From positions 17,298,001 to 17,362,000 of the forward strand of contig NC_043016.1 of the NCBI RefSeq assembly GCF_006345805.1: a stretch of 64,000 nt of DNA. Reading direction: 5' to 3'. Under the pieces are notes generated by a model. That model did no database searches and was not told where the DNA came from. It saw nothing but the letters and a program-made list of their open reading frames with translations. The stretch is from Octopus sinensis (Eukaryota). Shown piece by piece: positions 3,761-63,771 of the stretch. Both the position numbers and the translations under genes were made by a program. Position 1 is the stretch's first letter. Every line of letters begins with the position of its first letter.

Positions 3761-3804
3761 TAATAATAAATTCTCGTATATTCCATCTTCTGTTTTATAT
3801 ATAA

Positions 3805-4981: not shown

Positions 4982-5073
4982 CTACTCCAATATTGGCGTA
5001 AAAGGCCAATATTTATACCATATTTCAGACAAGTATGGCAAACAAATCAGAGGCCCGCCTGAAAAGGAAGAAA
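4982..5073 (+). CDS. NID1: Nidogen exon, C-terminal end of NIDO (G1) domain ([30 protein letters not shown])
   Basis: Strong acceptor ttattatttctttattttgcAG and donor GTAAGT at 5074. 92 nt, phase 2 to phase 1. [11 protein letters not shown] resembles the NIDO terminal motif SNxGxxGxW/YxF. The exit phase matches the downstream exons. Confidence 0.75.
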
Positions 5074-23609: not shown

Positions 23610-26600
23610 GACAGGCTTCTTTCAGTTTCCATCTACCAAATTCTCTCACAAGGCGTTGGTTGGCCTAAGGCTATTGTAGAAGACACTTGCCCAAGATGCC
23701 ATGCAGTGGGACTGAACCGAGAACCATATGGCTGGAAAGCAAGCTTTTTGCCACATAACCATGCCTGTGCCTATAAATTAATAACCCATAGATTTCTTGC
23801 TAATTGTCAAATCCCTGATTCCATTTACCATAACCAAAGTCTTCTATTCTTCTTAAATGCCAGCTAATTACTCTAAAGACCATTGCTAAATAGCTGTCAA
23901 TCTTTTTTACGTCCCCTGTGTGTACAACAAGTATTGGAAAGTAAATAAATTCTAATCTACAGTTGTTCTTCTCATTTGCTCACTTGAAACACACACACAC
24001 ACACACACATGCACACACACACACACACACATACTCTCTCACTCTCTCTCTCTCTCTCTCTAATTATATCCATTGTGATCCTCTAAACTCGGCCACCTTG
24101 AAGTTGACTTATTGCTGTAATTCGAAGTTCACCTCTTAGGAACTGTAATATTTATACTTCCTCCTCTTCCACTGCTGCCACTGTCGCCGCCACCAGCGTG
24201 CTAACGATTCTGCCAGTTCTGCCACTTTCAACACAAAACTATATCAAGTTTGTTCATACTCAGCTTTAGAAGCTTTGATTGAGCAGACCTATGATCAAAA
24301 CCATTCCACTCACAGCAATCCTCTCTTGTGTTTTTAGACGTAACACATCCAGAACCACATTATTCCATATCGTTATCCCTTTTTAAGACACTAAGATATT
24401 TAGCCATTATTTCTAGCAGATTGAATTTCTACGTAAGATACGTGTTGAAGCTGTCACGGGGACATAACTCTATTAAAGAAAAACAGTTATTTCCCTTATT
24501 GTGTTCTAATCTAGGATTAGGGAGTGACTTAGCTACGCAACATTAATCCTCCCAGTTCTGATACTCTTGTGACATTACGCGTGATTCAACACCGCCTAGC
24601 CTTTTTATAGACCATCTAAAATTAGGAACAACTCACTCTAATTGCTATTATCGACTTCTGTCAATAGATTCTCATAAAATTATTTTTTCTCACGCACACT
24701 AATATAAATACCTACACATATATACACACAATCATACATAATGCATGCAACACACACATGTATGCATATATGTACACATACATTACATACATACAAATGT
24801 ACATGTGCACATATATACATACACGCATGCACACACACACACACACACACACACTTTTCTACTCTATGTACAAGGCTCGAAATTTTTGGGGAGGGGTATA
24901 GTCGATTAGATCGATCCCCAGTACGCATCTGGTATTTAATTTATCGATCCCGAAAGGATGAAAGGCAAAGTCAACCTCGGCGGAATTCAAACTCAGAACG
25001 TAAAGACAGACGAAATACTGCTAATCATTTTGCCCAGTGAGCTAATGTTTCTGCCAGCTGGCCACCTTCATACATACATATATTACATATACATACATTA
25101 TATACATGCATACAAACATGTGCACATACATACATACATGCATTCAATCATGTATACATGCATGTGTGCATGCATGCGTACATACATATATACATGCATA
25201 CAAGCATGCATATACACATTCGTGCATACATACATACATCATATACATGCATACAAACACATGTTATACACACACGCAGATACATACACACCTATCTATG
25301 TAAACTTTACCATAAACTATTGAGTCAGTCCAGTGCATAATAGTTTAATTTAAATATTTCCAAGGACCTAAAAGGTTTCACATGAAGCGCTCTGCTTTGA
25401 GTACTTGCTTAATTATAGCAGCAACGACTGTAAGCTAATGAAAAGGATAATGTAATTCCTATTCTTGTGTCATTCATTAATTGTGTATTTATTTGTTTGT
25501 TTGTGTGTGTGTGCTTGTTTGTATTTCCCCTCCTTTTTCACATGTGTTTGCCGATTGTATACAATGGCCTTGCTGTTCATGTGGTTGGTGCGGTTTGCTT
25601 GCCTTCCGTCACAAGATAATGTCTGGGCTTCTTACTCTCTTGACATGCTGCGCAATCTTTGCAAAGAAAAGACTCATTCATTCGGTGGCGTTTGCTTCCG
25701 GTTCTCTACACAATCATATCATCTGAGTTGTTTGTTATTGTTTGATAGACTGGGAAATTAACACCCCACTTGGAAACGGATAGGGGTTGGTATCAGGAAG
25801 GGCAACCCGACAGAGAAAACTTTGCCTTTAATGTGCTCTCACCTGACCCATGCAAGCATAAAAAAGTAGACCGTAGATGATGCGATGACAGTGAAAACTC
25901 TGATGACAAGGACAATGAAAATATGATGAATATTGCAGGAAATCTAAATGTATAGCAAAGGGTTGAAATTTCATTTGTTGTTATTAATGCATTTATCATT
26001 CATTTCTTTGATGGAAAACCATATTCTAAATCTCAGAATATATCTCCATTCATAACACACAAAAAAACTTATCTTACAAAATTTTATTTCTTTCAGCTGA
26101 CTTTTTTTTTTTTTTTTTGAATTTTTAGTTTCCCAAGTTTCTTTTGTCTTTCTTTCTTTATTTTTTCTTCTTCAATGATGTTTAGAAATGTTTGGTAGAT
26201 GATCAATTAAATCCATGCTATATGTCTGTATTCTCTTTCTTTAGTCGAAGGATCAGGAACCGACACTCGTAAGTATCCCTAGATATCTACAACAGTGTTG
26301 TCGAATGAAAATAATCACCTGTTAACTTTGCATTTCCGTTTTTTTTGGTTTTTGTTTTTTGTTTAACATTTGCTGCATCCACATGAATATGCTTACAAAA
26401 AAAAAAAAAGGGATTTGTATCAATGAATGTTTTTAAACATAAACCCATGCAGAAGTCCATCTTATACTTATATTCATATTTTATAAATCATTCATAGGTA
26501 GGATCAATAAAAAAAGTACTCCATCCAGGAAGAGATAAATAACATTTAATATACACAACTACAAAAGAGAGCTTCTAATAGTTTCATGCCTTAAGATACA

Positions 26601-26987
26601 TTAAATTGACAGGTTCATATAGATTCCTCAGAGCTACATAGCATGCTTTATAAATCTGACAATTTAATGTATCTTTAAGCATAAAAGTATTAGTAAATCT
26701 TTTGTAATTGTGTTTATTAGAGAGTATATATATATATAACCATGTATATATATATTGTAGACGAAATTTAATTCAATCAGTGAAGACATTGAGCTGAAGC
26801 AAAGAGTTTCCTTGCTTGATGATGCATCAATCTCATTTGTCAATCATTTTGAATCCAAAATATCTTTATATGTTTGAGTTTACACAAAGAGCACAAAGAG
26901 TATAGAACACTCTGTGCTGAAACAGATATATGTATACACACACACACATATATATGTATACATATATGTATACACACATATATGTAT

Positions 26988-27018
<31 letters not shown>

Positions 27019-31288: not shown

Positions 31289-31322
<34 letters not shown>

Positions 31323-31580
31323 TAGTGGAATTATTGTGTATAATGCTCAGGTGCTCTACACCTCATCAAAGGTGTATGTACAGAACATAGAATTATGTAG
31401 AAAAGTCAGGAAAGTGAACAGTGTATGAGTCATGATATACATGTGTGCATGTGTATGGAGGGGGAAGGGAATATCAGGTGTAATGTTGGTGAATTTCAGG
31501 GATCATGGAGGTTTTAAAGGTTTTATTAATCTTGAAGGTTTTAATAATCTTGAAGTCTTGGTTCTTGACTGGTGTGGAAA

Positions 31581-35296: not shown

Positions 35297-38200
35297 CTCT
35301 CTCTCTCTCTCTCTCTCTCCCTTTCACTTCCTCTCCATTCCTCACCCTCTTGTACTATCATATATCTCTCTTCACCCCTACACACTCAATAAAACTGTAA
35401 AAAGTCAAAATTCCTGCAAAAGTTCAATTTGAAGACTCCACCAGAAAGGACGAAAGCGCTAATATATGATATATGATATAAGTTATATGATTTATAAAAA
35501 CATGTAACATACTAATAAATATCTTTAAATATAAAACCATCCAGATTTCTGAGTACCTCATTTCTTCTGATATATAATACCTGTACATCATCTCCAAACC
35601 TTAATATATATATATATATATATATATAATTAATTAATAAGGGTGAGAGAATTAGATACTAATTTAATAGTATATTTATTCAACACCAAGTGGCCTAGTG
35701 CTACGAGAAACCTGGATTATTATAATATTTTATAACATATTACAATACTTTTACAAAACAAATATAAGAGAGTGGTCAATATATTGCTCACTCTAGCACC
35801 AGTTAATCCAAAAGGTTTCAACCACGAAGATACATGTTTCCCATGAAAGCCAGTACGACTGTTAGCTCACACGGACAGGGCAAGTAAAAAATAACAAAAA
35901 TACAGATTATTTTGGGACAATTGTTTCGCTATTAATGAATTAAATGTAATATTACTTACAAAAAAATCCATTTGTAGCTCGTCAGCCAAGACTATCTGGA
36001 TGAAATCCACTCAATCACACGCCAGATTTTACCATAACGATAAATACGCGTGTGGTTCAATTGATTACATCCGACGTTATAATTCAAATGCCCCAACCAA
36101 CAGCGCGCCAAACTTTCACGGAAAACAGATACAGCATTTAGAAATAAATGCAGCATAATTATAATTAATTAATAAGGGTGAGAGAATTAGATACTAATTT
36201 AATAGTATATTTATTCAACACCAAGTGGCCTAGTGCTACGAGAAACCTGGATTATTATAATATCTTCGTGGTTGAAACCTTTTGGATTAACTGGTGCTAG
36301 AGTGAGCAATATATTGACCACTCTCTTATATTTGTTTTGTAAAAGTATTGTAATATGTTATAAAAATTATAATAATCCAGGTTCTCGTAGCACTAGGCCA
36401 CTTGGTGTTGAATAAATATACTATTAAATTAGTATCTAATTCTCTCACCCTTATTAATTAATTATAATTATGCTGCATTTATTTCTAAATGCTGTATCTG
36501 TTTTCCGTGAAAGTTTGGCGCGCTGTTGGTTGGGGCATTTGAATTATAACGTCGGATGTAATCAATTGAACCACACGCGTATTTATCGTTATGGTAAAAT
36601 CTGGCGTGTGATTGAGTGGATTTCATCCAGATAGTCTTGGCTGACGAGCTACAAATGGATTTTTTTGTAAGTAATATTACATTTAATTCATTAATAGCGA
36701 AACAATTGTCCCAAAATAATCTGTATTTTTGTTATTTTTTACTTGCCCTGTCCGTGTGAGCTAACAGTCGTACTGGCTTTCATGGGAAACATGTATCTTC
36801 GTGGTTGAAACCTTTTGGATTAACTGGTGCTAGAGTGAGCAATATATTGACCACTCTCTTATATTGTTTTATATATATATATAATATATATATATATAGA
36901 TAAGAAAGTTGATATATATATATGTACATACATACACACACACAAAGACTCACACATGTTTACACATACTCACACACACATGTAGAAGAAACAAAATATA
37001 CAATGTATGTGGCATGTTGTAATTCCATAAGTTTTCACTTAAAATTGCATAAATATGATAACAGAATTATTTGATACTTAGTAAAATATATAATCTCTCT
37101 AAGAATCCTATTTTTTATATCAGAAATGTGTTCTGAGTATTTTTTGTATGAACTAAAATGCTTCTTATATTAACTTGATTATTATTGTAATATTTAATCT
37201 TAAGTTTGATACTTGTAAAAAATAGTTATAATTGCAATGAATTTTTTTTTTTTTTGTTCTGGATGAATTTGGAACAAATTGAAATAACTTATTTCTCAGC
37301 ATGGTATGTTTTCAGGAATATATACTTGCAAGAATGTATGATATTTTTTAAGTATTTTATCATCATTTAATTTCCAGCATTTTTAAATGTTTTGCTTATA
37401 ATTTAAGTAATGTATTTAAATGTCATGTTGTCAAAGTTTGTACTTATAATTTTACATTTACATTGCCAATTCTGAATTGACAAATTTAACTCTATTTCTA
37501 AATTTCCAAATCAGATTTGTTTTATGATTTAAGTTCTTAGTAGCTTCTATATTTTCCAAATATTTCCAACAATTCACATCATGAATGTATCTTTCATTTT
37601 TTTTTTTTCCCTCTCTCAATTTTTCTTCTGCTGAAAGGAGACCCCTTGCAAACCTTCATGATTCTCTTCCTGCCTTGAATAGTAAATCACTTTTCAGATA
37701 TCATTCACTAATAAATGTTATTGTGCAGTAAATAATTCAAAATTTGGTCTACAACATCCTTAAACAAGTCTTTCTACTAAATTGGAGAAAACCTCAACAT
37801 CAATGAATCATTTCTAATGTAAACCTTCCAGCAAATGGATAAACTAAAATCTAATTATTTCTTTAATCTTCAGATGAAAACTGAAAGAAATTCCCGGTAG
37901 AAAATATTAATTAGCATAAGTAGTAATTAGAATTACTTTACCTTGATTAACATCCTTAAGAAGGTGCCCAGAGAAATATTTAACACCAAATTTTCTCTTC
38001 TGTTAACTTTTCTTTTATCTCTGTTTTGTCTGTACATTCTAGCAATTTACTCTGGAGAAATACCAGGTAAGTGGTTCAGTCAAGAATATACATTGGGCAT
38101 TCCTCCATCAATTCACATCTTTCTATGAGTCTCTTCTTTACTTTTTAATCCTTCTCAAGATAAACAACCAATTTTCTTCAGCATATACAATTTTACATTT

Positions 38201-53178: not shown

Positions 53179-56100
53179 TGATCACTCTATGTTACCAGAA
53201 CATAAAAATACATTGAGAGACATAATATATTCTACATTACATTTTCAGTAATCACAACATCACAGTGTAGGTATTTCTACTTAAATTTTACCATATAAAC
53301 AATTTCTACATTCGTATTATTATTATATAAGCACCTTCTACATCACTACCACTATATAAGCTCATTATACACCCATATCACTTCTACATTCACACTTTTG
53401 TCTTATGAAATTAACATTTATCTACTTTCTGTTTCCTTGAAAGCTGCTGTTTACCTTGATGTTAGCCTTGATCGAACAGGCTCAAAGTCCTACCAGCTAT
53501 GAACATTCTGTTTTTTTATTATTATTATTATTATTTTAGGTGTCATGTATCTCAGACTGTACCATCTGATGTCTCCATTGTTAAGCCCATAAGGTGTAGT
53601 TTGAAGGAGATTTGGATGCTACTTGTAGCAGTTTGAGTGACCATATGGACATTTCTCCCTGTTGGTTTGTTTTCAAACCTGTTATTTCAGTTGCTATTTT
53701 ATCATACATTTATCATAGTTCACGTTATTGTCCTTGTGAGCACAACTTTGGTCAGTGTTAAATGACTTTTCTTCCTTAATTAGTTATACTTATTCCAGAT
53801 AAAACAGAATATAGAAAGTATCTTAATGACTTCAAATGTTAATTATAAAATTGTTCTCATTATCTTTATCCTCTAAATGTAGTTGATGAAGACTTAGCCT
53901 TCTGTAAAAGTGAAAACAACTGTCACCACACGGCCAAATGTGTAGATTATGCAACAGGATATTGCTGCCAGTGCTCTTCCGTAACTTATGGCAATGGAAT
54001 CAAATGTTTGAAAATAGGTAAGATGCTTGAATTTTGTTCTTAGTCTACATCAGGTTGTCAATAAACTGGGGTAAACTCTGTGTGTGGTAAAAATGAAATT
54101 CTTGGGAGTAATGAAAACTCATTAAACATAAGTAAAATCATATAAAAAAACCATGTTCTTTCAACAAACCTTTTGAGTTCAAAGAATCTATGATTTCCTT
54201 CCTTTCAAATCAAGTGGGTAAAGACTTAAATAAATGTATTTTGGGGTAATTTGTTAAAAAAGTTCCCCAATCCCTGGTCTACATATTATGGGAAAAAACA
54301 AAATTAGTAGGAATATCAAAAGTTCAGAAATGTAAAAATGTCCACAAATCTTTTAATTAATCATTTGTAAAGTGATTCAGATTATTAGAATTATCTATGT
54401 TATGCTTATGTCTTGGCTTTTATGAATTTTATTGATTCTATAATGGGATGGAGAATTCTTCAAATTCGATATTTGCATATGCTGTTGAAACATAGATCAT
54501 TGGGACGGGAGAGTTGTTCCTGTTTTGGAGTTAAGCCAATTGACACAATTTAAGTTGTGATCAATTCCCAACAAATTCCATAAAATAACCCAGGCAGAGT
54601 ATGAACTCATGATGTTCTCAACACCAAGTATTAAATGTAAATTAAAGGAAGGGGATTGATGCCTGTTTGTCCACAAGATAATCTATTCTGAATAATGTCT
54701 CAACAATTATGTACAAAACTCCAAATAGACCTACATCTATTGTTGATAATAGCGTAAAAGTTAATCTGAAAGTCAGTTTCTTTACTCTGATATTTGTGGA
54801 TCTAACAGCGGAATGTATGAAATGATTTTCCTCTTGAAAAGATATATGTATAAATGCATAATACAAATTTCTACCATTAGGCCGTTTCCTAACAACAAAT
54901 GTAAACTGGTGCCGAGAAGAAATCTACCAAATACCGAAACAAATGCAATGGATTTGATCCCATGTCTTTTGCTTTCATTATTGATGTGGCTCTTTATTTT
55001 GTACATTGGCCCTTCTCAGATCACATAAAATCCAGTGAGACCATGCAACAAATCGAGTTTGATGTGATTAATAATAAAGGCAAAATCCTGACCAGTATAA
55101 TTACTGCACATTAAATGCATTCTTTCTTAATGGTAGCACACTTATTCGCATAAACAAAGAGGTGTGGGTTCAAGTACCACACAGATGGGGGAAAAAACCT
55201 AATTTTTTCTGTCAAAGGCTTATATGCTCCATTATTAGACTATTTTCTTCAGTCATAACACAGTGATTATTGCTATAAGCTTTAAGCTTCTAAAATACTA
55301 TTATATATATATATATATATTATATATATATATTAAATTAGAGATAAAACCACTATTAGGCAAATCAAACAGTGAAAAACATAAGCCATACATAAAATTA
55401 ATTTAAAAATATAAAAGTTAAAAATAAAAAATTATTTAATAATTTAAACTTATAAATTTTATATATATATACAAATATATATATATATATATGTATGTAT
55501 ATTTTTATATTTATATATTATTTTATTAATTAATTAATTAATTTTTTTTTTTATAAATCAAAAGTATTAAAAGTTTAATAAAAGATATATATATATATAT
55601 CAATAGATAGATGGATCTTAAATTTATTAATGAAGATAATACTATTGAAACCAAGATATTTGATCAATGTACTTTTATTTCAGAACATCCTCAACAACTT
55701 AACGGCAGAATTACTCTGACTCTAAATAAAACCAGATCATTTAACTTGAACAGACATTCATACATCATAATAACTAGCGGACGTGCCTACACTGTTGTCA
55801 GCTCAATTGCTCAAGAAACTGGTCTTTCGGTCATTTTATTGGATGGCATAAACAGTTTCCTTGGGTTCTTATTTGGCACCATAGAAACTGGAACTTCCAA
55901 AAATGGATATATGATAACAGGTAAGTGGGAAAATATTCTTGAACTCTTAGAAGGTAATCAATCATTGTAGTCCATCATCATTTTTTTCTTTTAATGTCTG
56001 TATTTCCATGTTGGCATGAGTTGGATGGTTCAACAAGAATTGGCAAGTCGAAGGGCTGCACTTGCCCCAGCTGTCTGCTTTGGCATGGTTTCTGTAGGTG

Positions 56101-56400
56101 GATGTCCTTCTTATCATTAGTCACTTTCCAGAGCCTACTGGGTGCTTTTAGATGTGGTACCAGCATGGATGCTTTTATATATATTCGTTTACTCTTTTAC
56201 TTGTTTCAGTCATTTGACTGCGGCCATGCTGGAGCACCACCTTTAGTCGAAGAAATTGACCCCAGGACTTATTCTTTGTAAGCCTAGTACTTACCCTATT
56301 GGTCTCATTTGCCAAACTGCTAAGAGACCAATTGGTTGTCAAGCAGAGGCAGGAGATACATAGACACACAGACACACACACACACATGCACACACATACA

Positions 56401-56435
<35 letters not shown>

Positions 56436-59400
56436 GACAGGTTTCTTTCAGTTTCCATCTACCAAATCCACTCATAAGGCTTTGGTTGGCCCAAGGCTAT
56501 AGTAGAAGGCACTTGCCCAGAGTGCCACACAGAGAGACTGAACCCAGAACCATATGGTTGGAAAGCAAGCTTCTTACCACACAGCCATGCCTGTGCCTAT
56601 ATATATTCATATATTTATTCGTAAATTTATGTTAACCCTTTTGTTAGCATGTTTCTGTTGAGATGCTCTGTGTTTCTTTTAATCATTTAGCTAGTGTTTG
56701 GAACATAAATTGTGACTAAGGTTTGGTGGAAGAATTTAATTCAAAACTTTTGAAAAGAAGACATTTGTACTACAGAGCCAGAGGCAGTTTCAGCTGGGTT
56801 GGTATCAAAAGGGTTAAAGACACTTTATCAAATAGATTTTTTTAATCAGTTTATTTAGTATATGAGGTGAAATAGTTAATGGTAGATCAGTTTATGGAAC
56901 ATCATCTCCTTTTTATAAAAAAAAAGCAAAAAAGAGATGATTAAATTTCATTGTGTATCTCTGTAAAATTTATCCGAAATGATTTCACCCAGGATACAAA
57001 GCCAAAGTAAAATGTACAATTGCCAAATTTTTAAAGAACTTAAAGAATTGATTTGTATTAGTGTCTCGTTGAATTTCAAGAAATATTTCCCTATTTCCTT
57101 CAAGGTGGAGATCTGAATCACACTGCTAAGGTAACATTTGAGACTGGAGAAGAAATTTTAATCAGGCAAAGGTTTTTCAGCCAGGATACTGATCTACACA
57201 TGCGAGCTGAGACAAATATCACAGGAACTTTGCCATGGATACGCAGTGGTGCAGTGATAGTTATAGATATGTATAATGAAGACTTTGTCCATACGGAACC
57301 TGGTAAGTAACTTTCCCTATTCACTTCACTGCAAAAATTACTCTTTTTATGCCTCAGCTATGTAAAAATTAAAAATAACATTAATTCCTAGGATAATAAT
57401 AATGGCATGACAATTTATCCTGTAGAAGTTTGTATCTTTTTATGTTAATGTATGGCTGTATTTTCTTAATACTTTTTAATATATAAGTTGTTATAAATGA
57501 CAGTTTTCTCCCAACTTATTCTTTGCCCACTACATCATTATCTTACTTTAATTTTTCCTCACTTTTTTTTACTTTTTCTTTCTCTTACTACTATTTTTTC
57601 TCTCTTATTCCCAAAATGGTTTGTTTAGCTTTGTTTATATGTTTTTCTCCTTTCCAATCTCTTTTACTAATTTCATTTTCTATATCACAATAGGTGTGTT
57701 ACGTGCCCGAACTACTCGTGTTTACCGAGTTGATGGTGTTGGCAAGAAATACACTTGGGAACAAAAAGTTGAATTTCACGAATGCATACACGACCCTTCA
57801 ATCAACAGGCCACAAGTATTTAGACATAGCATCAAAAAAATATATTATGGATACAGACAAGACAAACAAACAATCAGCTTTATTGCTGCCAGTGGTGTCC
57901 GAACTATTAAAGGTAAAATATTCTTATTTAAATTATTTTTCTGCATATTATTCCTCATAAATTTCTAAATCTCTGTAGTTTCAAATTACCATTATCTATT
58001 GGGAGACTTTTGTGATTTAAGCAAAATTATTTTCATGAATTCGTGTTCTTCAAAAATCATCACTTAATGTCCATGTTCCAAGCTGACATGCATTGGACAG
58101 TTTGACAGGATCTGATGAACTTAAGGACTGCATCAAGCTCCACTGTCTGTTTTGGCATGGTTTCTATGGCTGAATGCCTTTCCTAATGCCAACCACATAA
58201 GAGAATGTACTGGGTGCTTTATTTGTATCATGCAGCTCATAAGAGTACAAACCTGAAGGGGAAGGGAGTCAGCTTCATGCTGGGAATTGAAGGGATACAA
58301 TGTGAAATGGGGGGGGGGACAAAGCTGGCTCTTGTAGAAGAGCTGCACGGTTACTCACATTTTGTAGGGAAGGAAGAGGAATGGCCAGTAGGGGCTGTGA
58401 AGAGAAAGATATTAGAGATGAAGTGTTCAGGTGAGTAAAAGGGAGTGGGTGAAGAGTCTTCAAGAGTGAATGGGGGTGCAAGAGATGGCAAGATGAAGGG
58501 GCAGCCTACAAATGTAAAAAAAAAATGGTTAGGTAGAGATGAAGGAAGATGACTTCTAAGTCATGAGTTGGGGAAGGACAAAGAGATGCAGGTGGGAATG
58601 CGTAAGGTGGTGGAGAATGGCTGGATAGCGATAGAATTGACAGGTGGAAGGCAAAGAAGAAAAATGACAAAATGGGGGTAGGCTGCAGAGTGAGGGTAAG
58701 AGGTGGTGCATGGTGAGAGGTTGTTTGATTTATTGGGGTCAGAGGTAGGAAATCAATGTAATGAGTGAATGATAAAAAGCATAATATATTCAATGCCTTT
58801 AGAACTTAGTTATGTTGAGGGGGAAAGATCTTTTTAAGAACCTTATGTTACCCATCAAAATGGTTTTGTAGTAGTGAGACATAGACATTGTTTGTATAGT
58901 CTGGAGAGGAATCATTTGTGTAGAATTCATTCTTTATATATTGTTAACATTAAAGATGAAATAGAAGCAATCTGAGGAAGTGGTTGTACAGAAATGGTTG
59001 CTACCAATGAGTGCAGAGCAGATGACTGCCCTTATATGGTATGAATGGATGGTGAATGCTGGGTATTAAAAATAAATGACATGGAAGAAAGTGATGAGGG
59101 GAAGATTTTGCAGTATAATGCACAACAGTCACCACTTAAGTAGGTTTAAGAAAACTGTGGGTATTGTGCTGTGTTGTAGACCCATCAAACCCAAGTCAGC
59201 ATGGAAAAGAACAAAACAAAACAAACCCAATCCAAACATTGAAAATTTGTTAATGATGATAAGGAAGATGATTATTGATGATGTGTTGGCAACGACAACA
59301 ACAACAATCCTTCTACATAAGGCAAGAAATTTTGCAGGGGTCTGGGGGCTAGTTGATTATGTCAACTGGTATGTATTTCATTCACCCCTAAATGATAGAA

Positions 59401-62400
59401 GGCAAAGCCAACTGTGGCAGAATTTGTACTCAGAACATAATTACATGAAATGCCACTAAGAATTTTGTCTGACAAGCTGGTGGTTTTGCCAGCTTGCCAC
59501 CTTAATTATGATAACAACAACAAGAGGAAGATGAAGAAAGAAAAGTTGGGAGATATGAGAGGTTAGCTTGGGAAGTTAAGCAGTTGTGGTCGATGAAAAA
59601 GGTAGCAGTAGTACCAATAGTTATTGGAACAGTGGGCAAAAATCTCGAGAAGTATGTGGAACAAATAGGGGCTGCAATAAGGGTGGAGCGCTTGCAGAAA
59701 ACAGCACTGCTTAGAACCGCTCGAATACTCCAGAACGTGCTCGAAAAATAAGAGGTGTTACCTTAGTTCATTGGTAGTGAACAGCTGACACCTCCTGCAT
59801 TAGAAGCTGTGCAAAGGCAATAATAACAATAATAGCAGTAATTATAATAGCTCTCATGGCTTCTGATCTTAACTGATTGGAAGTGTTATCATGTACATTG
59901 TTTTGTCTTGGTATAAAAGATGGGCTACAGCAAATATTCTGCTCAATAACACAGATCTGCTTGTCACTTGTTTGACCTTAACCAGTTGAGCATGTCCCTT
60001 CGTGGCTGATGATATGTGCATCTCTGATCATGAGCAGAAGTGGTGGGTGAGCATCATAGCCATGTGTTGAGAGGGATTTTTGGGGTTTGAATAATTCACC
60101 TCGGGAAACATGGATGGTTCATTCAACATCCTTAAACAATCCTTATTCAGGGACCTTTTGAGCGGGATGGGCTACTCAACCTGAAGAAAATTCTAACTGG
60201 GCCCCACCTGCAAGGTCATGCACTGTTTATCTTGATTTGAGATTACTGTGTCATGCACTTATGGTTGTGATGCATGTGCCTGGTGTACCCTTATCAAACG
60301 GGTAGTCATGATGGGTATATTGGGCTTCGTATATTTTACCCCAGTGTCTCTTTGAGGGCATGCACTGCTCTTTCACTCAATAGTAATAATAATAATAATG
60401 ATGATGATAATAATAATAATAATAATAATAATAATCCTGTCTACTAAAGGCGCAAGGCCTGAAATTTTAGGTGAGGGGGATAAGTTGATTACATTAATCC
60501 CCAGCACACAACCGGTCCTTATTTGACTGGCCCTGAAAAAATGTAAGCCAAAGTCAAACTCTGCATAATTTGATCTCAAAAGGTAATGTTGGGTGAAATG
60601 CCATGAAGCATCTTTGTCCAATGTTTCTGCCAGCTTACCGTGTTAATGTAATTAATAATAATGACAATGATGCTGATGAAGATGATGACATCAATGATGA
60701 TGACAACAACAACAATAATAATAATGATGACATAATACAACTTATTAACCATTCCACATCTAGAAATGTTCTGATGGGTTCCATTTTGTTTGTTACTCTG
60801 ATTACAAAGAGCAATGGCTCACATTGCTAGAAGTATCTCATTAGAGCTGAACAAATGTCTTGGATAGGTTACCTAGAATAACGACTAATTGTCTCTCACC
60901 AAACGGACGTGTGCATGCAAATATTTAATTACCATTAATAAGCAAATTAACAGACCAAACAATGATTCTTTATTTCAGATAGTGCCAGCTGTCAAGATGT
61001 TAATTGTGGAGACAATTCACGTTGTGTAGTTTCGGATGATAGCTACAGATGTGTATGTAATCACGGATATGAAATGGAAAATTACGAGTGTAAAGGTGAG
61101 ATTTTTTTCATTAGAAATTTTAACATGTCTTTTATTGCTTATGTATGTGTTTTACATGCAAATATACATCAGGCACAGGTGTGGCCGTGTGGTAAGAAGC
61201 TTGCTTACCAATCATATAGTTCTGGGTTCAATTCTACTGCATGGCACCGTGGGCAAGTGTCTTCTACAATAGCGTTGGGCTGACCAAAGCTTTGTGAGTG
61301 GATCTGGTAGATGAAAGAATCCTGTCATATATATGTGTGTGTGTGTGTGTCTGTTTGTCCTTGTAGCTTTGCAGTTTGGCAAAAGAGACTGATAGAATAA
61401 GTACTAGGCTTAAAAAAGAACAAGTCGTGGGGTTGATTTGTTTGACTAAAACCTTTCAAAGTGGTGCACCAGCATGGCCACAGTCAAAATGACTGACACA
61501 AGTAAAAGAGAATCTGTGTATGTGCATTAATGTGTAAGGTCAATTACCATATGTGTTTTATTTGTAATTTTTATAAGTATTTCTGAGCTGAAGGGGGGGG
61601 GAAGGGGAGAGGTTTGATCTGTCTGTCTGTCCTTTAAACTGAACTTGGTGTATTTAGACTGCTTCATGTGCAATCATCAACACCTTTAGCAATATAATAT
61701 ATAATTTTGATATGGTGGTGAGCTGGCAGAATCGTTAGCACACAGGCAAAGTGCTTAGCGGTATTTCGTCTGTCTTTACGTTCTGAGTTCAAATTCTGTT
61801 GAGGTTCTTCATCCTTTCAAGGTCAATAAATTAAGTACCAGTTGTGTATTGGTATTGAGGTTGATCTAATCGACTGGCCACCTCCCCAAGAATTTTGTGC
61901 CTTGTGCCTAGAGTAGAAAAGAGCTTATAATTTTGATATTATAGGTTGTGCTCCATCATAGTACAAAATGCATGAGAACCTCTGAATGTCTTGTGAGTTC
62001 ATGGATCAGCTTCTGGAAGGATTCTCTCTCAAGTGCCATGCTAGGCAAAAATTTTATTGAAGTATTGAAGGCTGCAGTTGCCTATACAGGAAGGGCTTCT
62101 CTCTCTATGTTACTGAGAAAGGGCCTATGATAACTTGGGTCATGATAGACACTACTGTCACATTGCAAAAGGCTGGACAGATATTCTGAGGCCAATATTC
62201 TTTTTTTTTTTTTTTTTGTGTGTGAAAGAGCAACTGTATTAAATTGAATTGATTTCAGTATTTACAAGTATTTGCAGTAGCTGGAACAAAGAGCAAGTAC
62301 AACCTACAAAGCATTTAAAATAAAGTAATATTGAGTTAAATGTTTTCTGAAGTATTTACTCCTGTTTTCTTACAATATCAATTCTGTTGTGCTGTGACAT

Positions 62401-63771
62401 CCTTTCTCTAAAATCTCTCAGAAATCAGCAGTTTTAGATGAAAAGAAAATGACAAGTTGCAATAGCCTTGTTTTTCTAAGGCTTTTAAGAATGTAATGAT
62501 ATCAATAAGGCCCAAACTGGGCTAAATGAACATATAATTTGAGACCATATGCAACAGAATATCAATGTAATATTAAAATAATATATCATTATAATAATAG
62601 AATAACATTTTCTTTAAAATTAGATGTAAATGAATGTACTCAAAAAGTCTGCGGTGAAAATGAAGAATGTTTCAACGAGCCTGGCTCCTATATGTGCCGT
62701 TGTATCACCGGATATGAATCTGAAGGAGGCAAATGCAAGAAACGAGGTATGCAAATAATGAGATCTTTATTTTGTTGTTGTTGCTTAGTTCCAGGTTAGC
62801 TCTGATCAAGCAGATCTATGACTAAAAGCGTTCTTTTCAGTGACCACCCTGTCTTTTTAAGCGTTATCTAAGACTACACTATCCAACGTATCTTTTCATT
62901 AAGAGTTAGTTTGTTATTTCCAAAGAGATTTTGTTGGTATTTCTTGTAAGCTAAATTGTACCATAGAAGAACCTCTTCTGGATAATTCATCTTCTGTTTT
63001 ACTACATCGTACTAATGAACAAAATCTACAAAAGTTATTGCTGTAATTTTGTTCCCAGTAGTCCCCAGGCATTCCAGCTGTGACCATATCTGCTAAGTTC
63101 ACCATCTACTGCCTTTTTTACCTACAAAATAGTTTTTAACTATTAATGGTGAGGTATTGTGGATATATTTTCTCAGTAAACCTTCCTTGCAGTGAGATTT
63201 CCTGATGTGAATTGATGGCAGTGAACATATCTGTAATCAGCTGTGACAATCCTCTTCTTATTTACATATCTGGTAGATCTTACAGCTGCGTTATTCAATA
63301 TGTTCATTCCTTTTTTAGACAATAGGTTGTAATTTGAGGGAGATTTGGATGGTTTCTAACAATCTCCCATCATTTGGCTTAACCCTTTCGTGACTGTATT
63401 TATTTTGAGATGCTCTGAGTATCTTTTAATTACTTAAAATATAACAAAGGAACATAAATTGTGACTAAGGTTTGGTGGAAGATTTTGATTCAAAACTTAT
63501 GAAAACAAGACATTTGTACTCAAAGCCAGAGGCGGTTTCAGCTGGTTTGGTAACGAATGGGTTAATGTATATAATTGAATTTGTTGATAAAAAAGTGCTT
63601 TTCTGATTATGTAGAAATGAAATGTCTGTTAAAATGTAATCTTTCTCTTTTTAGACTGCCCTGAACAATGTCATGAACATGCTCAGTGTGTCTATAATTA
63701 TAATACTCGGTCTCCCAAATGTGAGTGCAATGCAGGCTTCAGAGGTGATGGACATTACTGTGAACTTATAG
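4982..63771 (+). CDS. NID1: Nidogen/entactin, partial multi-exon CDS: join(4982-5073, 26245-26268, 38043-38066, 53883-54017, 55684-55920, 57105-57302, 57694-57912, 60979-61095, 62624-62746, 63655-63771); both ends lie outside the window
   Basis: All exons have AG/GT boundaries. All junctions after the first exon are phase 1 and join into one stop-free frame: [77 protein letters not shown]...-G2 barrel-EGF-cbEGF-EGF. The order NIDO, linker, EGF, G2F, EGF rod is that of nidogen. CxDYATGxCCxC followed by PQxxNG is the nidogen EGF1/G2 signature (recalled from vertebrate NID1). The symbol denotes the NID1/NID2 family, not a specific paralog. Confidence 0.92.
5400..5720. repeat. Polypyrimidine/polypurine low-complexity tract
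   Basis: The + strand is almost all C/T for ~320 bp. Confidence 0.85.
6900..7850. repeat. ~300-bp repeat with a tRNA-like core: one inverted copy (~6900-7190) and two tandem copies (~7297-7560, ~7596-7840)
   Basis: Core tggtccaatggta...ggttcaaatcc (A/B boxes) at about 7326-7400, 7625-7700 and 7090-7162 (-). Period 299 bp. Confidence 0.65.
7775..8712. repeat. Perfect inverted repeat (foldback): 461-bp arms 7775-8235 and 8252-8712, 16-bp (AAT)n spacer
   Basis: Mirror coordinates sum to 16487 throughout. Mirror ORFs (for example 7837-8085 + and 8402-8650 -) have identical translations. Confidence 0.95.
8259..8637 (+). mobile_element. R4/Dong-like non-LTR retrotransposon 3' end (RLE endonuclease region), decayed; mirror copy at about 7850-8228 (-)
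   Basis: [21 protein letters not shown]...[10 protein letters not shown] followed, after a frameshift, by ...LLGTARILR. Starts at an (AAT)n run. Confidence 0.7.
8713..9254 (-). mobile_element. RTE 3' UTR, inverted segment (~1.6 tandem units)
   Basis: Directly follows the RT stop codon on the - strand. Same unit sequence as 10676-12370. Confidence 0.85.
9255..10676 (-). mobile_element. RTE-clade LINE, 5'-truncated open RT ORF (endonuclease absent), with internal PHD-like C4HC3 finger
   Basis: 467-aa uninterrupted ORF with [35 protein letters not shown] and the RTE-type C-terminus RLRWYGHV...GRGRPRKTW. The frame is open back to YRGIKLL at the 10676 breakpoint. Confidence 0.96.
10676..12543 (+). 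mobile_element. RTE 3' UTR, non-inverted segment: tandem ~350-bp units, ~63-bp sub-repeats (about 12055-12370), terminal ~170-bp tail and (ATG)n
   Basis: The unit marker gaagacccggcaagactag recurs at about 10781, 11128, 11493 and 11781. The segment ends in ...ggaagggcatccagctgtagaaac...gttaaatgatgatgatg. Confidence 0.85.
12526..13010. repeat. Compound (ATG)n-(ATT/GTT)n microsatellite, ~485 bp
   Basis: Direct reading. An 18-bp higher-order unit GTT(ATT)5 occupies the left part. Confidence 0.97.
13488..13618. repeat. (CATA)n with periodic tgcataattg interruptions
   Basis: Direct reading. Confidence 0.9.
14103..14500 (+). mobile_element. tRNA-derived SINE family C, tandem/partial copies; others at about 18490-18700, 20930-21075, 24860-25066, 32383-32600, 51580-51790, 59320-59503, 60435-60640, 61715-61915
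   Basis: Shared gagctggcagaaacgttagc...gagttcaaattc...gactttgcctttcatcc sequence. Confidence 0.8.
21462..23033 (+). mobile_element. Second, 5'-truncated copy of the same RTE 3' end (~4 tandem units + tail + (ATG)n)
   Basis: Same units, with the marker at about 21678, 22071 and 22420, then the same terminal tail at 22862-23033. Confidence 0.85.
23170..23360 (-). mobile_element. Penelope pLTR-like fragment with minimal hammerhead-like core
   Basis: Minus strand ctgaaga-g-tataggct-c-gaaac-gta. Stem I is poor. Next to (TA)n. Confidence 0.4.
26245..26268 (+). CDS. NID1: Candidate nidogen microexon 1, 24 nt, (I)EGSGTDT
   Basis: tatgtctgtattctctttctttAG|tcgaaggatcaggaaccgacactc|GTAAGT. Phase 1-1, no stop, in unique sequence. 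Confidence 0.6.
27207..27429. mobile_element. piggyBac-like MITE copy 1
   Basis: CCCTTT...AAAGGG termini, flanks ttga / TTAA. Homologous to 56636-56813 and 63383-63561. Confidence 0.7.
28140..28373. mobile_element. Tigger/pogo-like MITE
   Basis: Ends CAGTAATCCCTCG ... cgggggaatgCTG, TA on both sides. Confidence 0.65.
28885..29222. mobile_element. hAT (Charlie-like) MITE; a related fragment at about 20380-20480
   Basis: Ends CAGTGGTTCTCAAC ... GTTGGGAAGCCCTG. 8-bp flanks atctagat / ctttagat. Confidence 0.7.
33270..33650. repeat. (CA)n microsatellite interrupted by recurrent CACGTA
   Basis: Direct reading. Confidence 0.95.
34279..34503 (+). mobile_element. Penelope pLTR-like fragment with short inverted 5' copy and variant hammerhead (34363-34400)
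   Basis: Arms 34279-34353 and 34369-34432. Motif ctgt-CCGATGA...GAAAC-tcaga-GTA-acag. Embedded in (TA)n. Confidence 0.55.
35912..35989 (-). ncRNA. Type I hammerhead ribozyme motif, mirror copy
   Basis: Reverse complement of 36637-36714. Confidence 0.8.
36637..36714 (+). ncRNA. Type I hammerhead ribozyme motif, intact core
   Basis: Stem I ttgg/ccaa, core CTGACGA, stem II gcta/tagc, GAAAC-AATT-GTC (palindromic stem III). Predicted cleavage 3' of 36710. Confidence 0.8.
38043..38066 (+). CDS. NID1: Candidate nidogen microexon 2, 24 nt, (P/T)IYSGEIP
   Basis: Long pyrimidine tract (ttttctcttctgttaacttttcttttatctctgttttgtctgtacattctAG), exon caatttactctggagaaataccag, donor GTAAGT at 38067. Phase 1-1, no stop. 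Confidence 0.6.
40255..40570 (+). mobile_element. Penelope-like GIY-YIG fragment; pLTR-like tail with decayed hammerhead at about 40830-41090
   Basis: [15 protein letters not shown]...[11 protein letters not shown]...[12 protein letters not shown]...[13 protein letters not shown], with stops. CTGATGA core at 40984. Confidence 0.7.
41750..42700 (-). pseudogene. Highly decayed LINE RT remnant
   Basis: Fragmentary RTE-like motifs on the - strand, interrupted by many stops. Weak. Confidence 0.3.
45389..46020. mobile_element. Long-TIR foldback/MITE element (arms ~270 bp, visibly diverged)
   Basis: ttcaccacttaaaagtggatgtt ... aacatccacttttaagtggtgaa, TA on both sides. Arms about 45389-45667 and 45745-46020. 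Confidence 0.7.
46483..47398 (+). mobile_element. Mariner (Tc1/mariner) DNA transposon, internally deleted pseudogene
   Basis: ~30-bp TIRs (gaggtggtatcaaaaagttcccagactagtt / aactagtctgagaactttttgatacccct). The transposase motifs LHDDNAPGH and [15 protein letters not shown] are present, with stops and frameshifts. Confidence 0.9.
48731..49143 (+). mobile_element. Inverted pair of hammerhead-type tails around a tRNA-like segment (48901-48969)
   Basis: Arms about 48731-48900 (-) and 48970-49143 (+), each with CTGATGA and a decayed GAAA. The centre has an A box (tggtgtagcgg) and a B-box-like gagtttgatgcc. Confidence 0.55.
49193..49559. repeat. Near-perfect palindrome, 180-bp arms, 7-nt loop
   Basis: Arms 49193-49372 and 49380-49559, with three mismatches seen by eye. 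Confidence 0.9.
52650..52830 (+). mobile_element. Penelope pLTR-like fragment with slightly decayed hammerhead (52662-52719)
   Basis: ataa-CTGAAGA-gatg...catc-cgaac-tcaga-GTT-ttat. Flanked by (TA)n. Confidence 0.5.
53435..53670 (+). repeat. Unclassified interspersed repeat (also about 6770-6850, 24250-24430, 62780-62880, 63300-63365)
   Basis: Recurrent blocks ttagctttgatc(g/a)a(g/a)cag and aatttgagggagatttgg. Confidence 0.45.
53883..54017 (+). CDS. NID1: Nidogen exon, EGF-like 1 ([44 protein letters not shown])
   Basis: AG at 53881-82, GTAAG at 54018, 135 nt, phase 1-1. Six-Cys EGF with the nidogen-typical DYATGxCCxC...GNG. Confidence 0.93.
55684..55920 (+). CDS. NID1: Nidogen exon, G2 beta-barrel part 1 ([10 protein letters not shown]...[17 protein letters not shown]...SKNGYMIT)
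   Basis: tttcAG acceptor, GTAAG donor at 55921, 237 nt. Lies inside ORF 55611-55970. Motifs PQxxNG, HSY, GRxYT and KNGxxITG match the G2F domain. Confidence 0.95.
56636..56813. mobile_element. piggyBac-like MITE copy 2
   Basis: TTAA-CCCTTTT ... AAAAGGG-TTAA. Confidence 0.75.
57105..57302 (+). CDS. NID1: Nidogen exon, G2 part 2 ([23 protein letters not shown]...[10 protein letters not shown])
   Basis: tttccttcaAG acceptor, GTAAG donor at 57303, 198 nt, phase 1-1. Missed by the ORF track. Matches the G2F pattern AxVTF...IxQxF...GxLP...YxE. Confidence 0.93.
57694..57912 (+). CDS. NID1: Nidogen exon, G2 part 3 ([14 protein letters not shown]...[15 protein letters not shown]...[13 protein letters not shown])
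   Basis: aatAG acceptor, GTAAA donor at 57913, 219 nt. Lies inside ORF 57621-57968. The YxWxQxxxFxECxH motif is typical of G2F. Confidence 0.93.
59521..59830 (+). mobile_element. R4/Dong-like 3' end, second family member
   Basis: [44 protein letters not shown]...[19 protein letters not shown]. Flanked by AAC and AAT repeats. Confidence 0.72.
60979..61095 (+). CDS. NID1: Nidogen exon, rod EGF-like ([38 protein letters not shown])
   Basis: tatttcAG acceptor, GTGAG donor at 61096, 117 nt, phase 1-1, six Cys in EGF spacing. Confidence 0.92.
62624..62746 (+). CDS. NID1: Nidogen exon, calcium-binding EGF ([41 protein letters not shown])
   Basis: aattAG acceptor, GTATG donor at 62747, 123 nt. cbEGF consensus DxNEC...CxNxxGSYxC. 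Confidence 0.93.
63383..63561. mobile_element. piggyBac-like MITE copy 3
   Basis: TTAA-CCCTTTCGTGAC ... GTAACGAATGGG-TTAA. Confidence 0.75.
63655..63771 (+). CDS. NID1: Nidogen exon, rod EGF-like with RGD ([38 protein letters not shown])
   Basis: ctttctctttttAG acceptor, GTAAT donor at 63772, 117 nt, six Cys. Confidence 0.92.
   Translation, partial: TALNNVMNMLSVSIIIILGLPNVSAMQASEVMDITVNL

What the first reader, a model, noticed from the sequence alone, without database searches (positions are those of the whole stretch)
26245..26268. 24-nt microexon adding an acidic EGSG (glycosaminoglycan-acceptor-like) site to the nidogen G1-G2 linker
Seen: a consensus acceptor and GTAAGT donor enclose exactly 24 nt in phase 1-1, 21 kb from the previous exon. 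Spliced in, it gives ...PPEKEE-I-EGSGTDT.... Established: acidic-flanked Gly-Ser-Gly is the preferred xylosyltransferase acceptor for chondroitin/heparan sulfate chains. Vertebrate nidogens are regarded as glycoproteins, not proteoglycans. Inference: optional inclusion could switch this nidogen between a plain linker protein and a part-time proteoglycan, giving a splice-controlled basement-membrane code that I am not aware has been described.
Basis: partly seen in the sequence, partly recalled or inferred. Interest (0 to 1): 0.85.

Follow-up and report, generated by a model that had tools for sequence, protein, structure and literature searches.

The report
Annotated octopus nidogen linker microexon
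The 24-base stretch is a real mini-exon of the octopus nidogen gene that is already in public gene models; it adds a conserved acidic Gly-Ser-Gly motif that looks like a sugar-chain attachment site, but nobody has tested whether a chain is attached, and comparable sites are already reported in human nidogen-2.

Summary
Window 26245-26268 is a 24-nt, phase 1-1 exon with strong splice sites.

With it and a second 24-nt exon (38043-38066) spliced in, the window's translation is an exact substring of Octopus sinensis RefSeq nidogen-1, XP_029648740.1.

O. bimaculoides RefSeq lists three isoforms of 1274, 1266 and 1258 aa: both microexons, the first only, neither. O. vulgaris models carry the first only.

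Argonauta hians has an orthologous 24-nt exon in its genome, encoding (V)DGSGFGP. Sepia esculenta mRNAs encode DTGSGSI at the same place. Other molluscs have TG-x-V-x-IF there, one intron and no microexon. So the exon arrangement is derived in octopods and the Gly-Ser-Gly in coleoid cephalopods.

The segment lies in the least confidently modelled coil between G1 and the first EGF. It fits published xylosyltransferase preferences: Gly at -1 and +1, acidic flanks.

Glycosaminoglycan attachment is plausible but untested.

Verdict: a real, already annotated exon with a reasonable untested function. Modest interest.

The parts
4982..5073 (+). Last exon of the NIDO (G1) domain. It encodes ...[30 protein letters not shown] and ends in phase 1 with a leftover A; the donor is GTAAGT.
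   Evidence: The peptide is identical in O. sinensis, O. vulgaris and O. bimaculoides proteins.
26225..26244 (+). 3' splice site of microexon 1: the polypyrimidine tract tctgtattctctttcttt (16/18 pyrimidines) plus AG.
26245..26268 (+). Microexon 1 (the finding). 24 nt, phase 1-1, encoding (I)EGSGTDT plus the first base of the next codon. It carries the acidic Gly-Ser-Gly.
   Evidence: Present in O. sinensis XP_029648740.1 and O. vulgaris CAI9734846.1 and CAI9734847.1, and as IDGSGSDN in O. bimaculoides X1 and X2. The Argonauta orthologue is L001:26209-26232.
26269..26274 (+). 5' splice site of microexon 1, GTAAGT.
   Evidence: Only 8 GTAAGT occur on this strand of the intron.
38043..38066 (+). 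Microexon 2. 24 nt, phase 1-1, cattctAG|CAATTTACTCTGGAGAAATACCAG|GTAAGT, encoding (P/T)IYSGEIP. It carries a second Ser-Gly, but with Tyr rather than Gly at -1.
   Evidence: Included in O. sinensis XP_029648740.1 and O. bimaculoides X1 (LIYSGEIA). Absent from O. bimaculoides X2 and X3 and from both O. vulgaris models. No counterpart found in the Argonauta intron or in Sepia mRNAs.
53883..54017 (+). First EGF-like exon, (x)[44 protein letters not shown], phase 1-1. It is the acceptor for either microexon or for direct splicing from 5073.
   Evidence: Pfam EGF.
55684..57912 (+). Three G2F (nidogen G2 beta-barrel) exons at 55684-55920, 57105-57302 and 57694-57912, all phase 1-1.
   Evidence: PF07474 G2F, E=1.2e-38.
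60979..63771 (+). Three rod-domain EGF exons at 60979-61095, 62624-62746 and 63655-63771, all phase 1-1.

Best explanation
Window 26245-26268 is a genuine 24-nt, phase 1-1 cassette exon of the Octopus sinensis nidogen-1 gene. It is the first of two tandem 24-nt microexons in the 48.8-kb intron between the last NIDO exon and the first EGF exon.

SHOWN:
- It has canonical strong splice sites.
- It is part of the RefSeq protein of this species.
- A congener has annotated isoforms with and without it.
- An orthologous 24-nt exon exists in the Argonauta genome.
- The encoded acidic-x-Gly-Ser-Gly is invariant in every cephalopod sequence examined: four octopods, Sepia esculenta mRNAs and two related, unidentified Logan transcript sequences. 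It is absent from the non-cephalopod mollusc linkers compared (gastropods, a bivalve and unnamed Logan transcripts).
- It lies in the least confidently modelled coil between G1 and EGF/G2.

INFERRED:
- The Ser of E-G-S-G is a xylosyltransferase acceptor that can prime a chondroitin or heparan sulfate chain. Nidogen carrying the exon would then be a proteoglycan, as reported for human nidogen-2.
- Skipping removes the site.
- Microexon 2 lengthens the linker by 8 residues and adds a weaker Y-S-G-E site.

My probabilities: real, used exon about 0.98. Alternative use of at least one of the two microexons about 0.8. Biologically meaningful skipping of this particular exon about 0.5. GAG attachment at its Ser about 0.4.
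For: Exon reality:
- Exact substring match of the spliced translation to XP_029648740.1.
- Splice sites and phase.
- Rarity of such sites in the intron.

Alternative use:
- O. bimaculoides XP_052829735 (1274 aa), XP_052829737 (1266 aa) and XP_052829738 (1258 aa) differ by exactly these 8-residue blocks.
- O. vulgaris models have microexon 1 only, while O. sinensis has both.

Conservation:
- Argonauta L001:26209-26232 reads ctctag|TTGACGGATCAGGATTTGGACCAA|gtaagt. It is phase 1-1, lies between the orthologous exons, and shares an identical GGATCAGGA core.
- Ten contigs of about 4 kb from separate runs each carry one uninterrupted 3798-nt ORF encoding PNDFDTGSGSIFEED, with Ser as TCT rather than TCA, a synonymous difference. 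Three of these runs are cited in Sepia esculenta RNA-seq papers.
- Alignment A1.

Derived state:
- Littorina and Pinctada have a single phase-1 intron and TG(T/D)|V.IF, with no Ser-Gly.

Motif fit:
- Context is E(-5) E(-4) I E(-2) G(-1) S G(+1) T D(+3).
- Published rules are GSG > SG, acidic residues at -3/-4, and sites in disordered regions.
- Gly at -1 and +1 is poorly replaceable for XT1, and acidic residues raise activity.

Disorder:
- In the AlphaFold2 model of Argonauta nidogen, residues 142-161 have pLDDT below 50 (10-residue block means 37 and 30) and no secondary structure. The insert is residues 148-154.

Precedent:
- Human NID2 carries chondroitin sulfate at Ser358 and Ser452.
- NID1 is called a 'bona fide proteoglycan'.
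- A fish NID2 linker contains SEED-SG-RP.
Against: - No biochemical evidence exists for any cephalopod nidogen.
- There is a Lys at -6, and basic residues lower XT1 activity.
- Gly-Ser-Gly is also a generic flexible-linker sequence.
- Skipping of this exon rests on a single predicted isoform (O. bimaculoides X3), and I could not inspect its read support.
- All linker-covering Sepia transcript proteins fetched (8) include the segment.
- I saw no junction reads for the window's own species.
Confidence: 0.42

Rival explanations
1. Spacer only. The microexon is real, but its role is purely physical. It adds 8 flexible, acidic residues that set the length and flexibility of the very short G1-G2 tether, and no glycan is attached. 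Gly-Ser-Gly is conserved because it is the most flexible small-residue combination.
For: - Without both microexons the tether between the NIDO end and the first EGF cysteine is very short: PPEKEEIDEDLAFC.
- With microexon 1, the length matches that of other molluscs: 30-34 residues from the conserved Gly to the first Cys.
- Both microexons are exactly 8 codons, so the isoforms form a length series.
- The region is modelled as coil with very low confidence.
Against: - Flexibility alone does not require an invariant Ser flanked by two Gly plus an upstream acidic residue across lineages as distant as octopods and cuttlefish, while the remaining positions vary freely (T/S/F, D/G/I, T/N/P).
- Non-cephalopod molluscs fill the same place with hydrophobic V-x-I-F.
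Confidence: 0.3
2. A different modification. The Ser/Thr-rich insert (SGTDT) is a site for mucin-type O-GalNAc glycosylation or secretory-pathway phosphorylation, not for xylosylation. Microexon 2 (IYSGEIP) could add an S-x-E kinase site or a sulfotyrosine, like the sulfated Tyr residues of the vertebrate nidogen link.
For: - Nidogen is described as a sulfated glycoprotein with a flexible G1-G2 link.
- The insert has three hydroxyl residues in seven.
- Microexon 2 has Tyr at -1, which the XT1 substitution data disfavour.
- The S-x-E and Tyr-sulfation readings come from my own knowledge and were not tested.
Against: - The Thr residues are not conserved: TDT, SDN, FGP and SI- in different species. 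Only G-S-G is.
- That pattern fits a xylosyltransferase site (small residues required at -1 and +1) better than a mucin-type site.
Confidence: 0.15
3. No real switch. Microexon 1 is effectively constitutive, and the skipped isoform (O. bimaculoides X3) is low-level splicing noise or a prediction artefact. Whatever the insert does, it is not regulated by splicing. Only microexon 2, or neither, is truly alternative. This rivals the 'splice-controlled code' part of the claim, not the GAG part.
For: - Microexon 1 is present in 8 of the 9 octopod protein models held and in all linker-covering Sepia transcript proteins fetched (8).
- Its splice sites are very strong, 16/18 pyrimidines plus GTAAGT.
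- The 1-versus-2 difference between O. vulgaris and O. sinensis concerns microexon 2 only.
Against: - RefSeq lists a distinct X3 product lacking both microexons. In my experience such variants are normally issued only with transcript support, but I could not check that here.
- Assemblers report dominant isoforms, so minor skipped forms would be missed in the Sepia contigs.
Confidence: 0.45
4. Chance pseudo-exon. An accidental AG...GTAAGT pair in a long AT-rich intron that is never spliced in.
For: Loose filters find similar numbers of candidates on both strands. For example, GT[AG]AG donors with at least 12/18 pyrimidines give 5 sense and 6 antisense.
Against: - Exact match to the RefSeq protein.
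- Orthologous exon in Argonauta.
- Equivalent residues in Sepia mRNAs.
- Shuffle expectation of 0.007 at this site's quality.
Confidence: 0.01

Closest known systems
Human nidogen-2 (and nidogen-1) as chondroitin-sulfate proteoglycans
   Same: Same protein family. GAG chains are reported on Ser358 and Ser452 of NID2 (Toledo et al. 2020, as tabulated in PMC8418075), and NID1 is called a 'bona fide proteoglycan' (PMC13038410). From my memory of the UniProt domain table, which I did not verify here, both NID2 sites fall in the G1-G2 link. A fish NID2 linker I held has SEED-SG-RP.
   Different: The vertebrate link is long (over 150 residues), and its sites are not reported to sit on a cassette microexon. 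The octopus link is tiny, and its only Gly-Ser-Gly is confined to a 24-nt exon. The cephalopod motif arose independently: other molluscs lack it. No biochemical data exist for cephalopods.
CD44 v3 exon (splice-dependent proteoglycan form)
   Same: Inclusion of one alternative exon supplies the SGXG acceptor. Only isoforms containing v3 carry chondroitin or heparan sulfate (PMC2199896). This is the same logic as proposed here.
   Different: CD44 is a cell-surface receptor and v3 is a full-size exon, with GAG addition shown experimentally. Here the protein is a secreted basement-membrane linker, the exon is 24 nt, and GAG addition is only inferred.
APP (L-APP/appican) and APLP2
   Same: Small alternative exons decide whether a single chondroitin-sulfate site exists, producing part-time proteoglycans (PMC4314671; PMC4991393).
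   Different: There, exon skipping creates or permits the site (exon 15 of APP, exon 14 of APLP2). Here, exon inclusion would bring it in.
Agrin y and z microexon inserts (own knowledge, not checked here)
   Same: A basement-membrane protein in which 12-33-nt cassette exons, including a 24-nt z8 exon, switch function: heparin binding and acetylcholine-receptor clustering.
   Different: The agrin inserts change protein-binding surfaces inside or next to folded LG domains. They do not add a GAG acceptor to a disordered tether.

Membership tests
Nidogen (entactin) gene | G2F beta-barrel domain following an EGF module | tested here: met
   Pfam PF07474 G2F at E=1.2e-38, residues 93-270 of the window's partial protein, preceded by an EGF hit.
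Nidogen (entactin) gene | N-terminal NIDO domain and C-terminal LDL-receptor YWTD propeller | tested here: met
   Both lie outside the window. However, the window's translation is an exact substring of XP_029648740.1. The O. bimaculoides protein that represents its 90%-identity cluster carries precomputed PF06119 NIDO and PF00058 Ldl_recept_b hits.
Cassette microexon | Length of at most about 27-30 nt, frame-preserving, canonical AG/GT sites | tested here: met
   24 nt, phase 1-1, 16/18 pyrimidines + AG, GTAAGT donor.
Cassette microexon | Present in mature mRNA | tested here: met
   Encoded in RefSeq and ENA protein models of O. sinensis, O. vulgaris and O. bimaculoides. Equivalent residues appear in assembled Sepia esculenta mRNAs from at least 10 runs. 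I did not see junction reads for the window species directly.
Cassette microexon | Both included and skipped forms exist | tested here: inconclusive
   O. bimaculoides X3 (1258 aa) lacks it, while X1 and X2 contain it. This is a single predicted isoform and its read support could not be inspected. All other models include it.
Glycosaminoglycan attachment site (proteoglycan core) | Ser followed by Gly, ideally Gly-Ser-Gly, with nearby acidic residues and few basic ones | tested here: met
   Sequence EKEEIEGSGTD: Gly at -1 and +1, Glu at -2, -4 and -5, Asp at +3, one Lys at -6.
Glycosaminoglycan attachment site (proteoglycan core) | Located in a disordered, exposed region of a secreted protein | tested here: met
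   In the AlphaFold2 model of the Argonauta orthologue, residues 142-161 (the insert is 148-154) have pLDDT 30-37 and no secondary structure. This is a prediction, not a measurement. Secretion is assumed from what is known of the nidogen family; I ran no signal-peptide prediction.
Glycosaminoglycan attachment site (proteoglycan core) | Xylose-initiated chondroitin or heparan sulfate chain actually present on the Ser | not testable with these tools
   Needs enzyme-shift assays or glycoproteomics.
Splice-controlled part-time proteoglycan (CD44 v3 / APP / APLP2 type) | The acceptor Ser exists only in some splice isoforms | tested here: met
   In the skipped form the linker reads PPEKEEIDEDL, with no Ser. 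The only Gly-Ser-Gly of the tether is inside the microexon.
Splice-controlled part-time proteoglycan (CD44 v3 / APP / APLP2 type) | GAG chain found on the including isoform and not on the skipping isoform, with regulated isoform ratios | not testable with these tools
   No expression or biochemical data were accessible.

The most novel reading that the evidence does not exclude
Coleoid cephalopods independently evolved an acidic Gly-Ser-Gly glycosaminoglycan acceptor in the nidogen G1-G2 tether, and in octopods it sits on a lineage-specific 24-nt cassette exon. Together with a second, Octopus-restricted 24-nt exon carrying Tyr-Ser-Gly-Glu, splicing would set the number of GAG chains (0, 1 or 2) and the tether length of a core basement-membrane linker in a tissue-specific way. 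That would be a splice-tunable proteoglycan form of nidogen, not described in any animal.
Probability: 0.25. Interest if true: 0.55.

Novelty: new member of a known kind. Interest (0 to 1): 0.3.

Why it matters
If the Ser is really xylosylated, cephalopod nidogen would be another case of a matrix protein that alternative splicing turns into a proteoglycan, as with CD44 v3, APP and APLP2. It would also be a second, independent origin of GAG-bearing nidogen besides vertebrate nidogen-2. That would suggest that a charged chain on the G1-G2 tether is functionally useful for basement membranes.

The evolutionary picture found here makes a tidy small example of microexon birth in an extracellular-matrix gene: one ancestral phase-1 intron in a gastropod and a bivalve, against two introns flanking a 24-nt exon in octopods, with the residues at that position differing from hydrophobic V-x-I-F to G-S-G.

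But the exon is already annotated, the mechanism has close precedents, and the functional step is unproven. This is a modest lead, not a surprise.

Tried and rejected
1. The search for homologous proteins with window-derived queries of 91 aa and 428 aa returned no cephalopod protein, even though XP_029648740.1 contains the query exactly. The same database returned the Octopus cluster when I queried with the Argonauta protein. Those two negatives therefore say nothing about biology.
A single G2F exon worked and led to Argonauta.
3. blastn of +/-200 nt around each microexon against the Argonauta locus found only low-complexity matches. Even exon 4982-5073 was not detected at the DNA level, so intron-flank conservation cannot be judged at this divergence.
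4. O. bimaculoides genomic DNA, which is the right distance for a flank-conservation test, could not be fetched because the gene spans 217 kb.
5. Lottia is held as an uninterrupted ORF and gives no exon-structure information.
6. I searched the Argonauta introns for a counterpart of microexon 2 by blastn, by splice-site scan, and by looking for any AG-N(12-48)-GT open frame containing Ser-Gly. Nothing credible turned up.
7. Relaxed splice-site scans of the window's intron gave equal counts on both strands, so there is no sign of further hidden microexons.
8. Local repeat search: the microexon is not part of a repeat family within 25000-27500.
9. Literature: no relevant paper combines nidogen and microexons, and a 2024 nidogen review mentions neither GAG chains nor splicing.
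10. The chance pseudo-exon reading was considered and rejected (see the rival explanations).
Full report

Yes. Window 26245-26268 reads TCGAAGGATCAGGAACCGACACTC. It is preceded by ...tctgtattctctttctttAG and followed by GTAAGT. The upstream exon 4982-5073 ends GGC CCG CCT GAA AAG GAA GAA + A, with a GTAAGT donor. Joining the two gives ...GPPEKEE-I-EGSGTDT and leaves one base over, so the exon is phase 1-1. That site is a second 24-nt, phase 1-1 unit, cattctAG|CAATTTACTCTGGAGAAATACCAG|GTAAGT, encoding (P/T)IYSGEIP.

Every other exon I could define in the window is also phase 1-1, so any combination of them stays in frame:
- 53883-54017, EGF.
- 55684-55920, 57105-57302 and 57694-57912, G2F.
- 60979-61095, 62624-62746 and 63655-63771, EGF.

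Pfam confirms G2F (E=1.2e-38) and EGF modules.

**2. Is it more than chance?**

I filtered the 48.8-kb intron for a GTAAGT donor, pyrimidine at -3, at least 13 of 18 pyrimidines upstream, a length of 6-60 nt divisible by 3, and an open frame. On the sense strand exactly two sites pass, and they are these two 24-nt units. One site passes on the antisense strand. Dinucleotide-preserving shuffles give 0.27-0.35 sites on average, with P(>=2) about 0.05. At the tract quality of 26245 (16/18) the average is 0.007. Because the thresholds were set after seeing the site, this is only suggestive. Looser filters give equal counts on both strands. The exon is not part of a local repeat family.

**3. What settles it: related sequences**

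Window-derived queries to the word-indexed protein database returned nothing useful. An exhaustive HMMER search with one G2F exon found a 77%-identical protein. It is named 'nidogen-1-like isoform X2, partial' from Argonauta hians, and I could fetch its 102-kb genomic locus. Its linker reads EIREPERDN-V-DGSGFGP-I-GEEFGPAFCKS. In the genome the middle block is a separate 24-nt, phase 1-1 exon at L001:26209-26232, ctctag|TTGACGGATCAGGATTTGGACCAA|gtaagt. It lies between the orthologues of exon 4982-5073 and the EGF exon. 14 of the 24 nucleotides match the window, including an unbroken GGATCAGGA (Gly-Ser-Gly) core.

Querying with the full-length Argonauta protein then retrieved the Octopus cluster.
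- O. sinensis XP_029648740.1 reads [32 protein letters not shown]. My 428-aa translation of the window with both microexons is an exact substring of it, so the window is the O. sinensis nidogen-1 locus and both microexons are in its RefSeq model.
- O. vulgaris CAI9734846.1 and CAI9734847.1 contain microexon 1 only (IEGSGTDTL).
- O. bimaculoides has three RefSeq isoforms:
  - X1, 1274 aa, with both (IDGSGSDNLIYSGEIAV).
  - X2, 1266 aa, with the first only (IDGSGSDNF).
  - X3, 1258 aa, with neither (EEIDEDLGP).

The exon is therefore real, already annotated, and annotated as alternative in a congener. No model with microexon 2 alone is among the proteins I retrieved.

**4. How deep does it go?**

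A 52%-identical cluster consists of contigs of about 4 kb, each with one uninterrupted 3798-nt ORF. Fourteen contigs carry this protein and I fetched ten, each from a different sequencing run. They are spliced mRNAs. Three of those runs are cited in Sepia esculenta larval RNA-seq papers. All eight proteins of that cluster that I fetched and that cover the linker encode QPDPND-F-D[TA]GSG..-F-; none lacks the segment. In the ten contigs the Ser codon is TCT rather than TCA, a synonymous difference. An acidic residue followed by Gly-Ser-Gly therefore spans both coleoid lineages, while the other insert positions vary (alignment A1).

Non-cephalopod molluscs have D-L-N-T-G-x-V-x-I-F at the same place, with no Ser-Gly. 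These are Lottia, Littorina, Babylonia, Nucella, Plakobranchus, Pinctada and an unnamed Logan transcript (P0063). In Littorina and Pinctada the genome has one phase-1 intron there (...LNTG(T/D)|V.IF...) and no microexon. So the two-intron, 24-nt-exon arrangement is derived in octopods at least, and the Gly-Ser-Gly is derived in coleoid cephalopods. I cannot tell whether the exon arose by exonisation inside the ancestral intron or by gain of a second intron. Microexon 2 has no detectable counterpart in Argonauta or Sepia. It appears restricted to Octopus.

**5. What it most likely does**

Shown: the insert lies in the tether between G1 and the first EGF. An AlphaFold2 model of the Argonauta protein, built on a 19-sequence alignment, has one of its least confident stretches exactly there. 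Residues 142-161 have pLDDT below 50 (10-residue block means 37 and 30) and no secondary structure, and the insert is residues 148-154.

Motif fit. The context is E(-5)E(-4)I(-3)E(-2)G(-1)-S-G(+1)T(+2)D(+3). Published glycoproteomics ranks candidate serines GSG > SG > others, finds acidic residues mostly N-terminal at -3/-4, and finds all sites in disordered regions (PMC10424144). XT1 substitution data show that Gly at -1 and +1 is poorly replaceable, that acidic residues help and that basic residues hurt (PMC13038410).

Precedent. Human nidogen-2 carries chondroitin sulfate at Ser358 and Ser452. Nidogen-1 is called a bona fide proteoglycan. A fish NID2 linker I held has SEED-SG-RP.

Inferred: the Ser is a xylosyltransferase acceptor, so nidogen containing the exon could carry a GAG chain and skipping would remove the only such site of the tether. 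Microexon 2 has Tyr at -1 and is a poorer candidate. At minimum it lengthens the tether by 8 residues.

A rough composition estimate gives about a 4% chance that a random 8-mer contains Ser-Gly, and about 0.15% that both do.

Caveats:
- There is a Lys at -6.
- Gly-Ser-Gly is also a generic flexible linker.
- There is no biochemistry for any cephalopod nidogen.

I put GAG attachment at about 0.4.

**6. Is it a switch?**

Microexon 1 is present in 8 of the 9 octopod models I held and in all linker-covering Sepia transcript proteins I fetched. Only O. bimaculoides X3 lacks it. Its splice sites are very strong. Microexon 2 differs between the nearly identical O. sinensis and O. vulgaris models (99.5% identical over the compared region) and between X1 and X2. 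The better-supported variable unit is therefore microexon 2. Regulated skipping of microexon 1 is possible but rests on one predicted isoform whose read support I could not see.

**7. Comparison with what is known**

- The CD44 v3 exon brings in an SGXG acceptor, and only v3 isoforms are proteoglycans.
- Skipping of APP exon 15 creates the appican site.
- Exclusion of APLP2 exon 14 permits chondroitin sulfate at Ser614.

The glycoproteomics literature contradicts it. I found no relevant paper linking nidogen and microexons.

What would be new is the combination. The putative acceptor is confined to a lineage-specific 24-nt cassette exon of nidogen. It arose independently of the vertebrate sites.

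**8. Verdict**

This is a real, already annotated microexon with a plausible but untested GAG-acceptor role and close mechanistic precedents. It counts as a new member of a known kind, of modest interest (0.3). The most novel reading not excluded is a splice-tunable (0, 1 or 2 chain) proteoglycan form of a core basement-membrane linker in cephalopods. I give that about 0.25 probability and about 0.55 interest if true. None of the steps I took or propose needed to be referred.

Noticed in passing
It is in the O. sinensis RefSeq model and O. bimaculoides X1. It is absent from O. vulgaris models, O. bimaculoides X2 and X3, the Argonauta genome and Sepia mRNAs. It looks like the more variable and younger of the two. 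From my own knowledge, Y-S-G-E also fits an S-x-E kinase motif or a sulfotyrosine context; I did not test this.
   Followed up: yes
window 9258-10676 (- strand): A 473-aa open frame with a reverse-transcriptase domain (Pfam RVT_1, E=4e-31) and a weak PHD-finger hit below Pfam's cutoff (21.9 vs 24 bits). This is a retroelement copy inside the large nidogen intron.
   Followed up: partly
window 8013-8474: A near-perfect palindrome: two 231-nt arms, 228/231 complementary, giving identical open frames on both strands. The 91-aa frame has no Pfam hit.
   Followed up: partly
window 27-290, 2119-2395 and many places in 8650-11700: Repeated short ORF-like units recur on both strands, for example ...APRKF...HAIPA..LHA.D.IQ... 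and ...[20 protein letters not shown].... They look like SINE- or satellite-like repeat families filling the intron.
   Followed up: no
L001 (Argonauta hians) about 31308-31410 and 31886-31990: Two extra partial copies of the 3' part of the first EGF exon, about 578 nt apart and embedded in CT-rich repeats, downstream of the real exon at 30768. This is either a tandem duplication or an assembly artefact.
   Followed up: partly
L002 (Lottia gigantea) 1001-4774: The Lottia nidogen gene is held as a single uninterrupted 3774-nt ORF, whereas Littorina and Pinctada genes span about 41-45 kb with introns. It could be an intronless retrogene or a cDNA-like model.
   Followed up: no
L013 (Littorina) 11273/11753; L014 (Pinctada) 10173/10931 (intron boundaries): A single phase-1 intron at ...LNTG(T/D)|V.IF..., where octopods have two phase-1 introns flanking the 24-nt exon. 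This is a candidate case of microexon birth, by exonisation or by intron gain.
   Followed up: partly
tool behaviour, versus 32: Queries translated from the window did not retrieve the Octopus nidogen cluster, although one member contains the query exactly. The Argonauta protein did retrieve it. Negative results from that search with window-derived queries should not be read as absence.
   Followed up: yes
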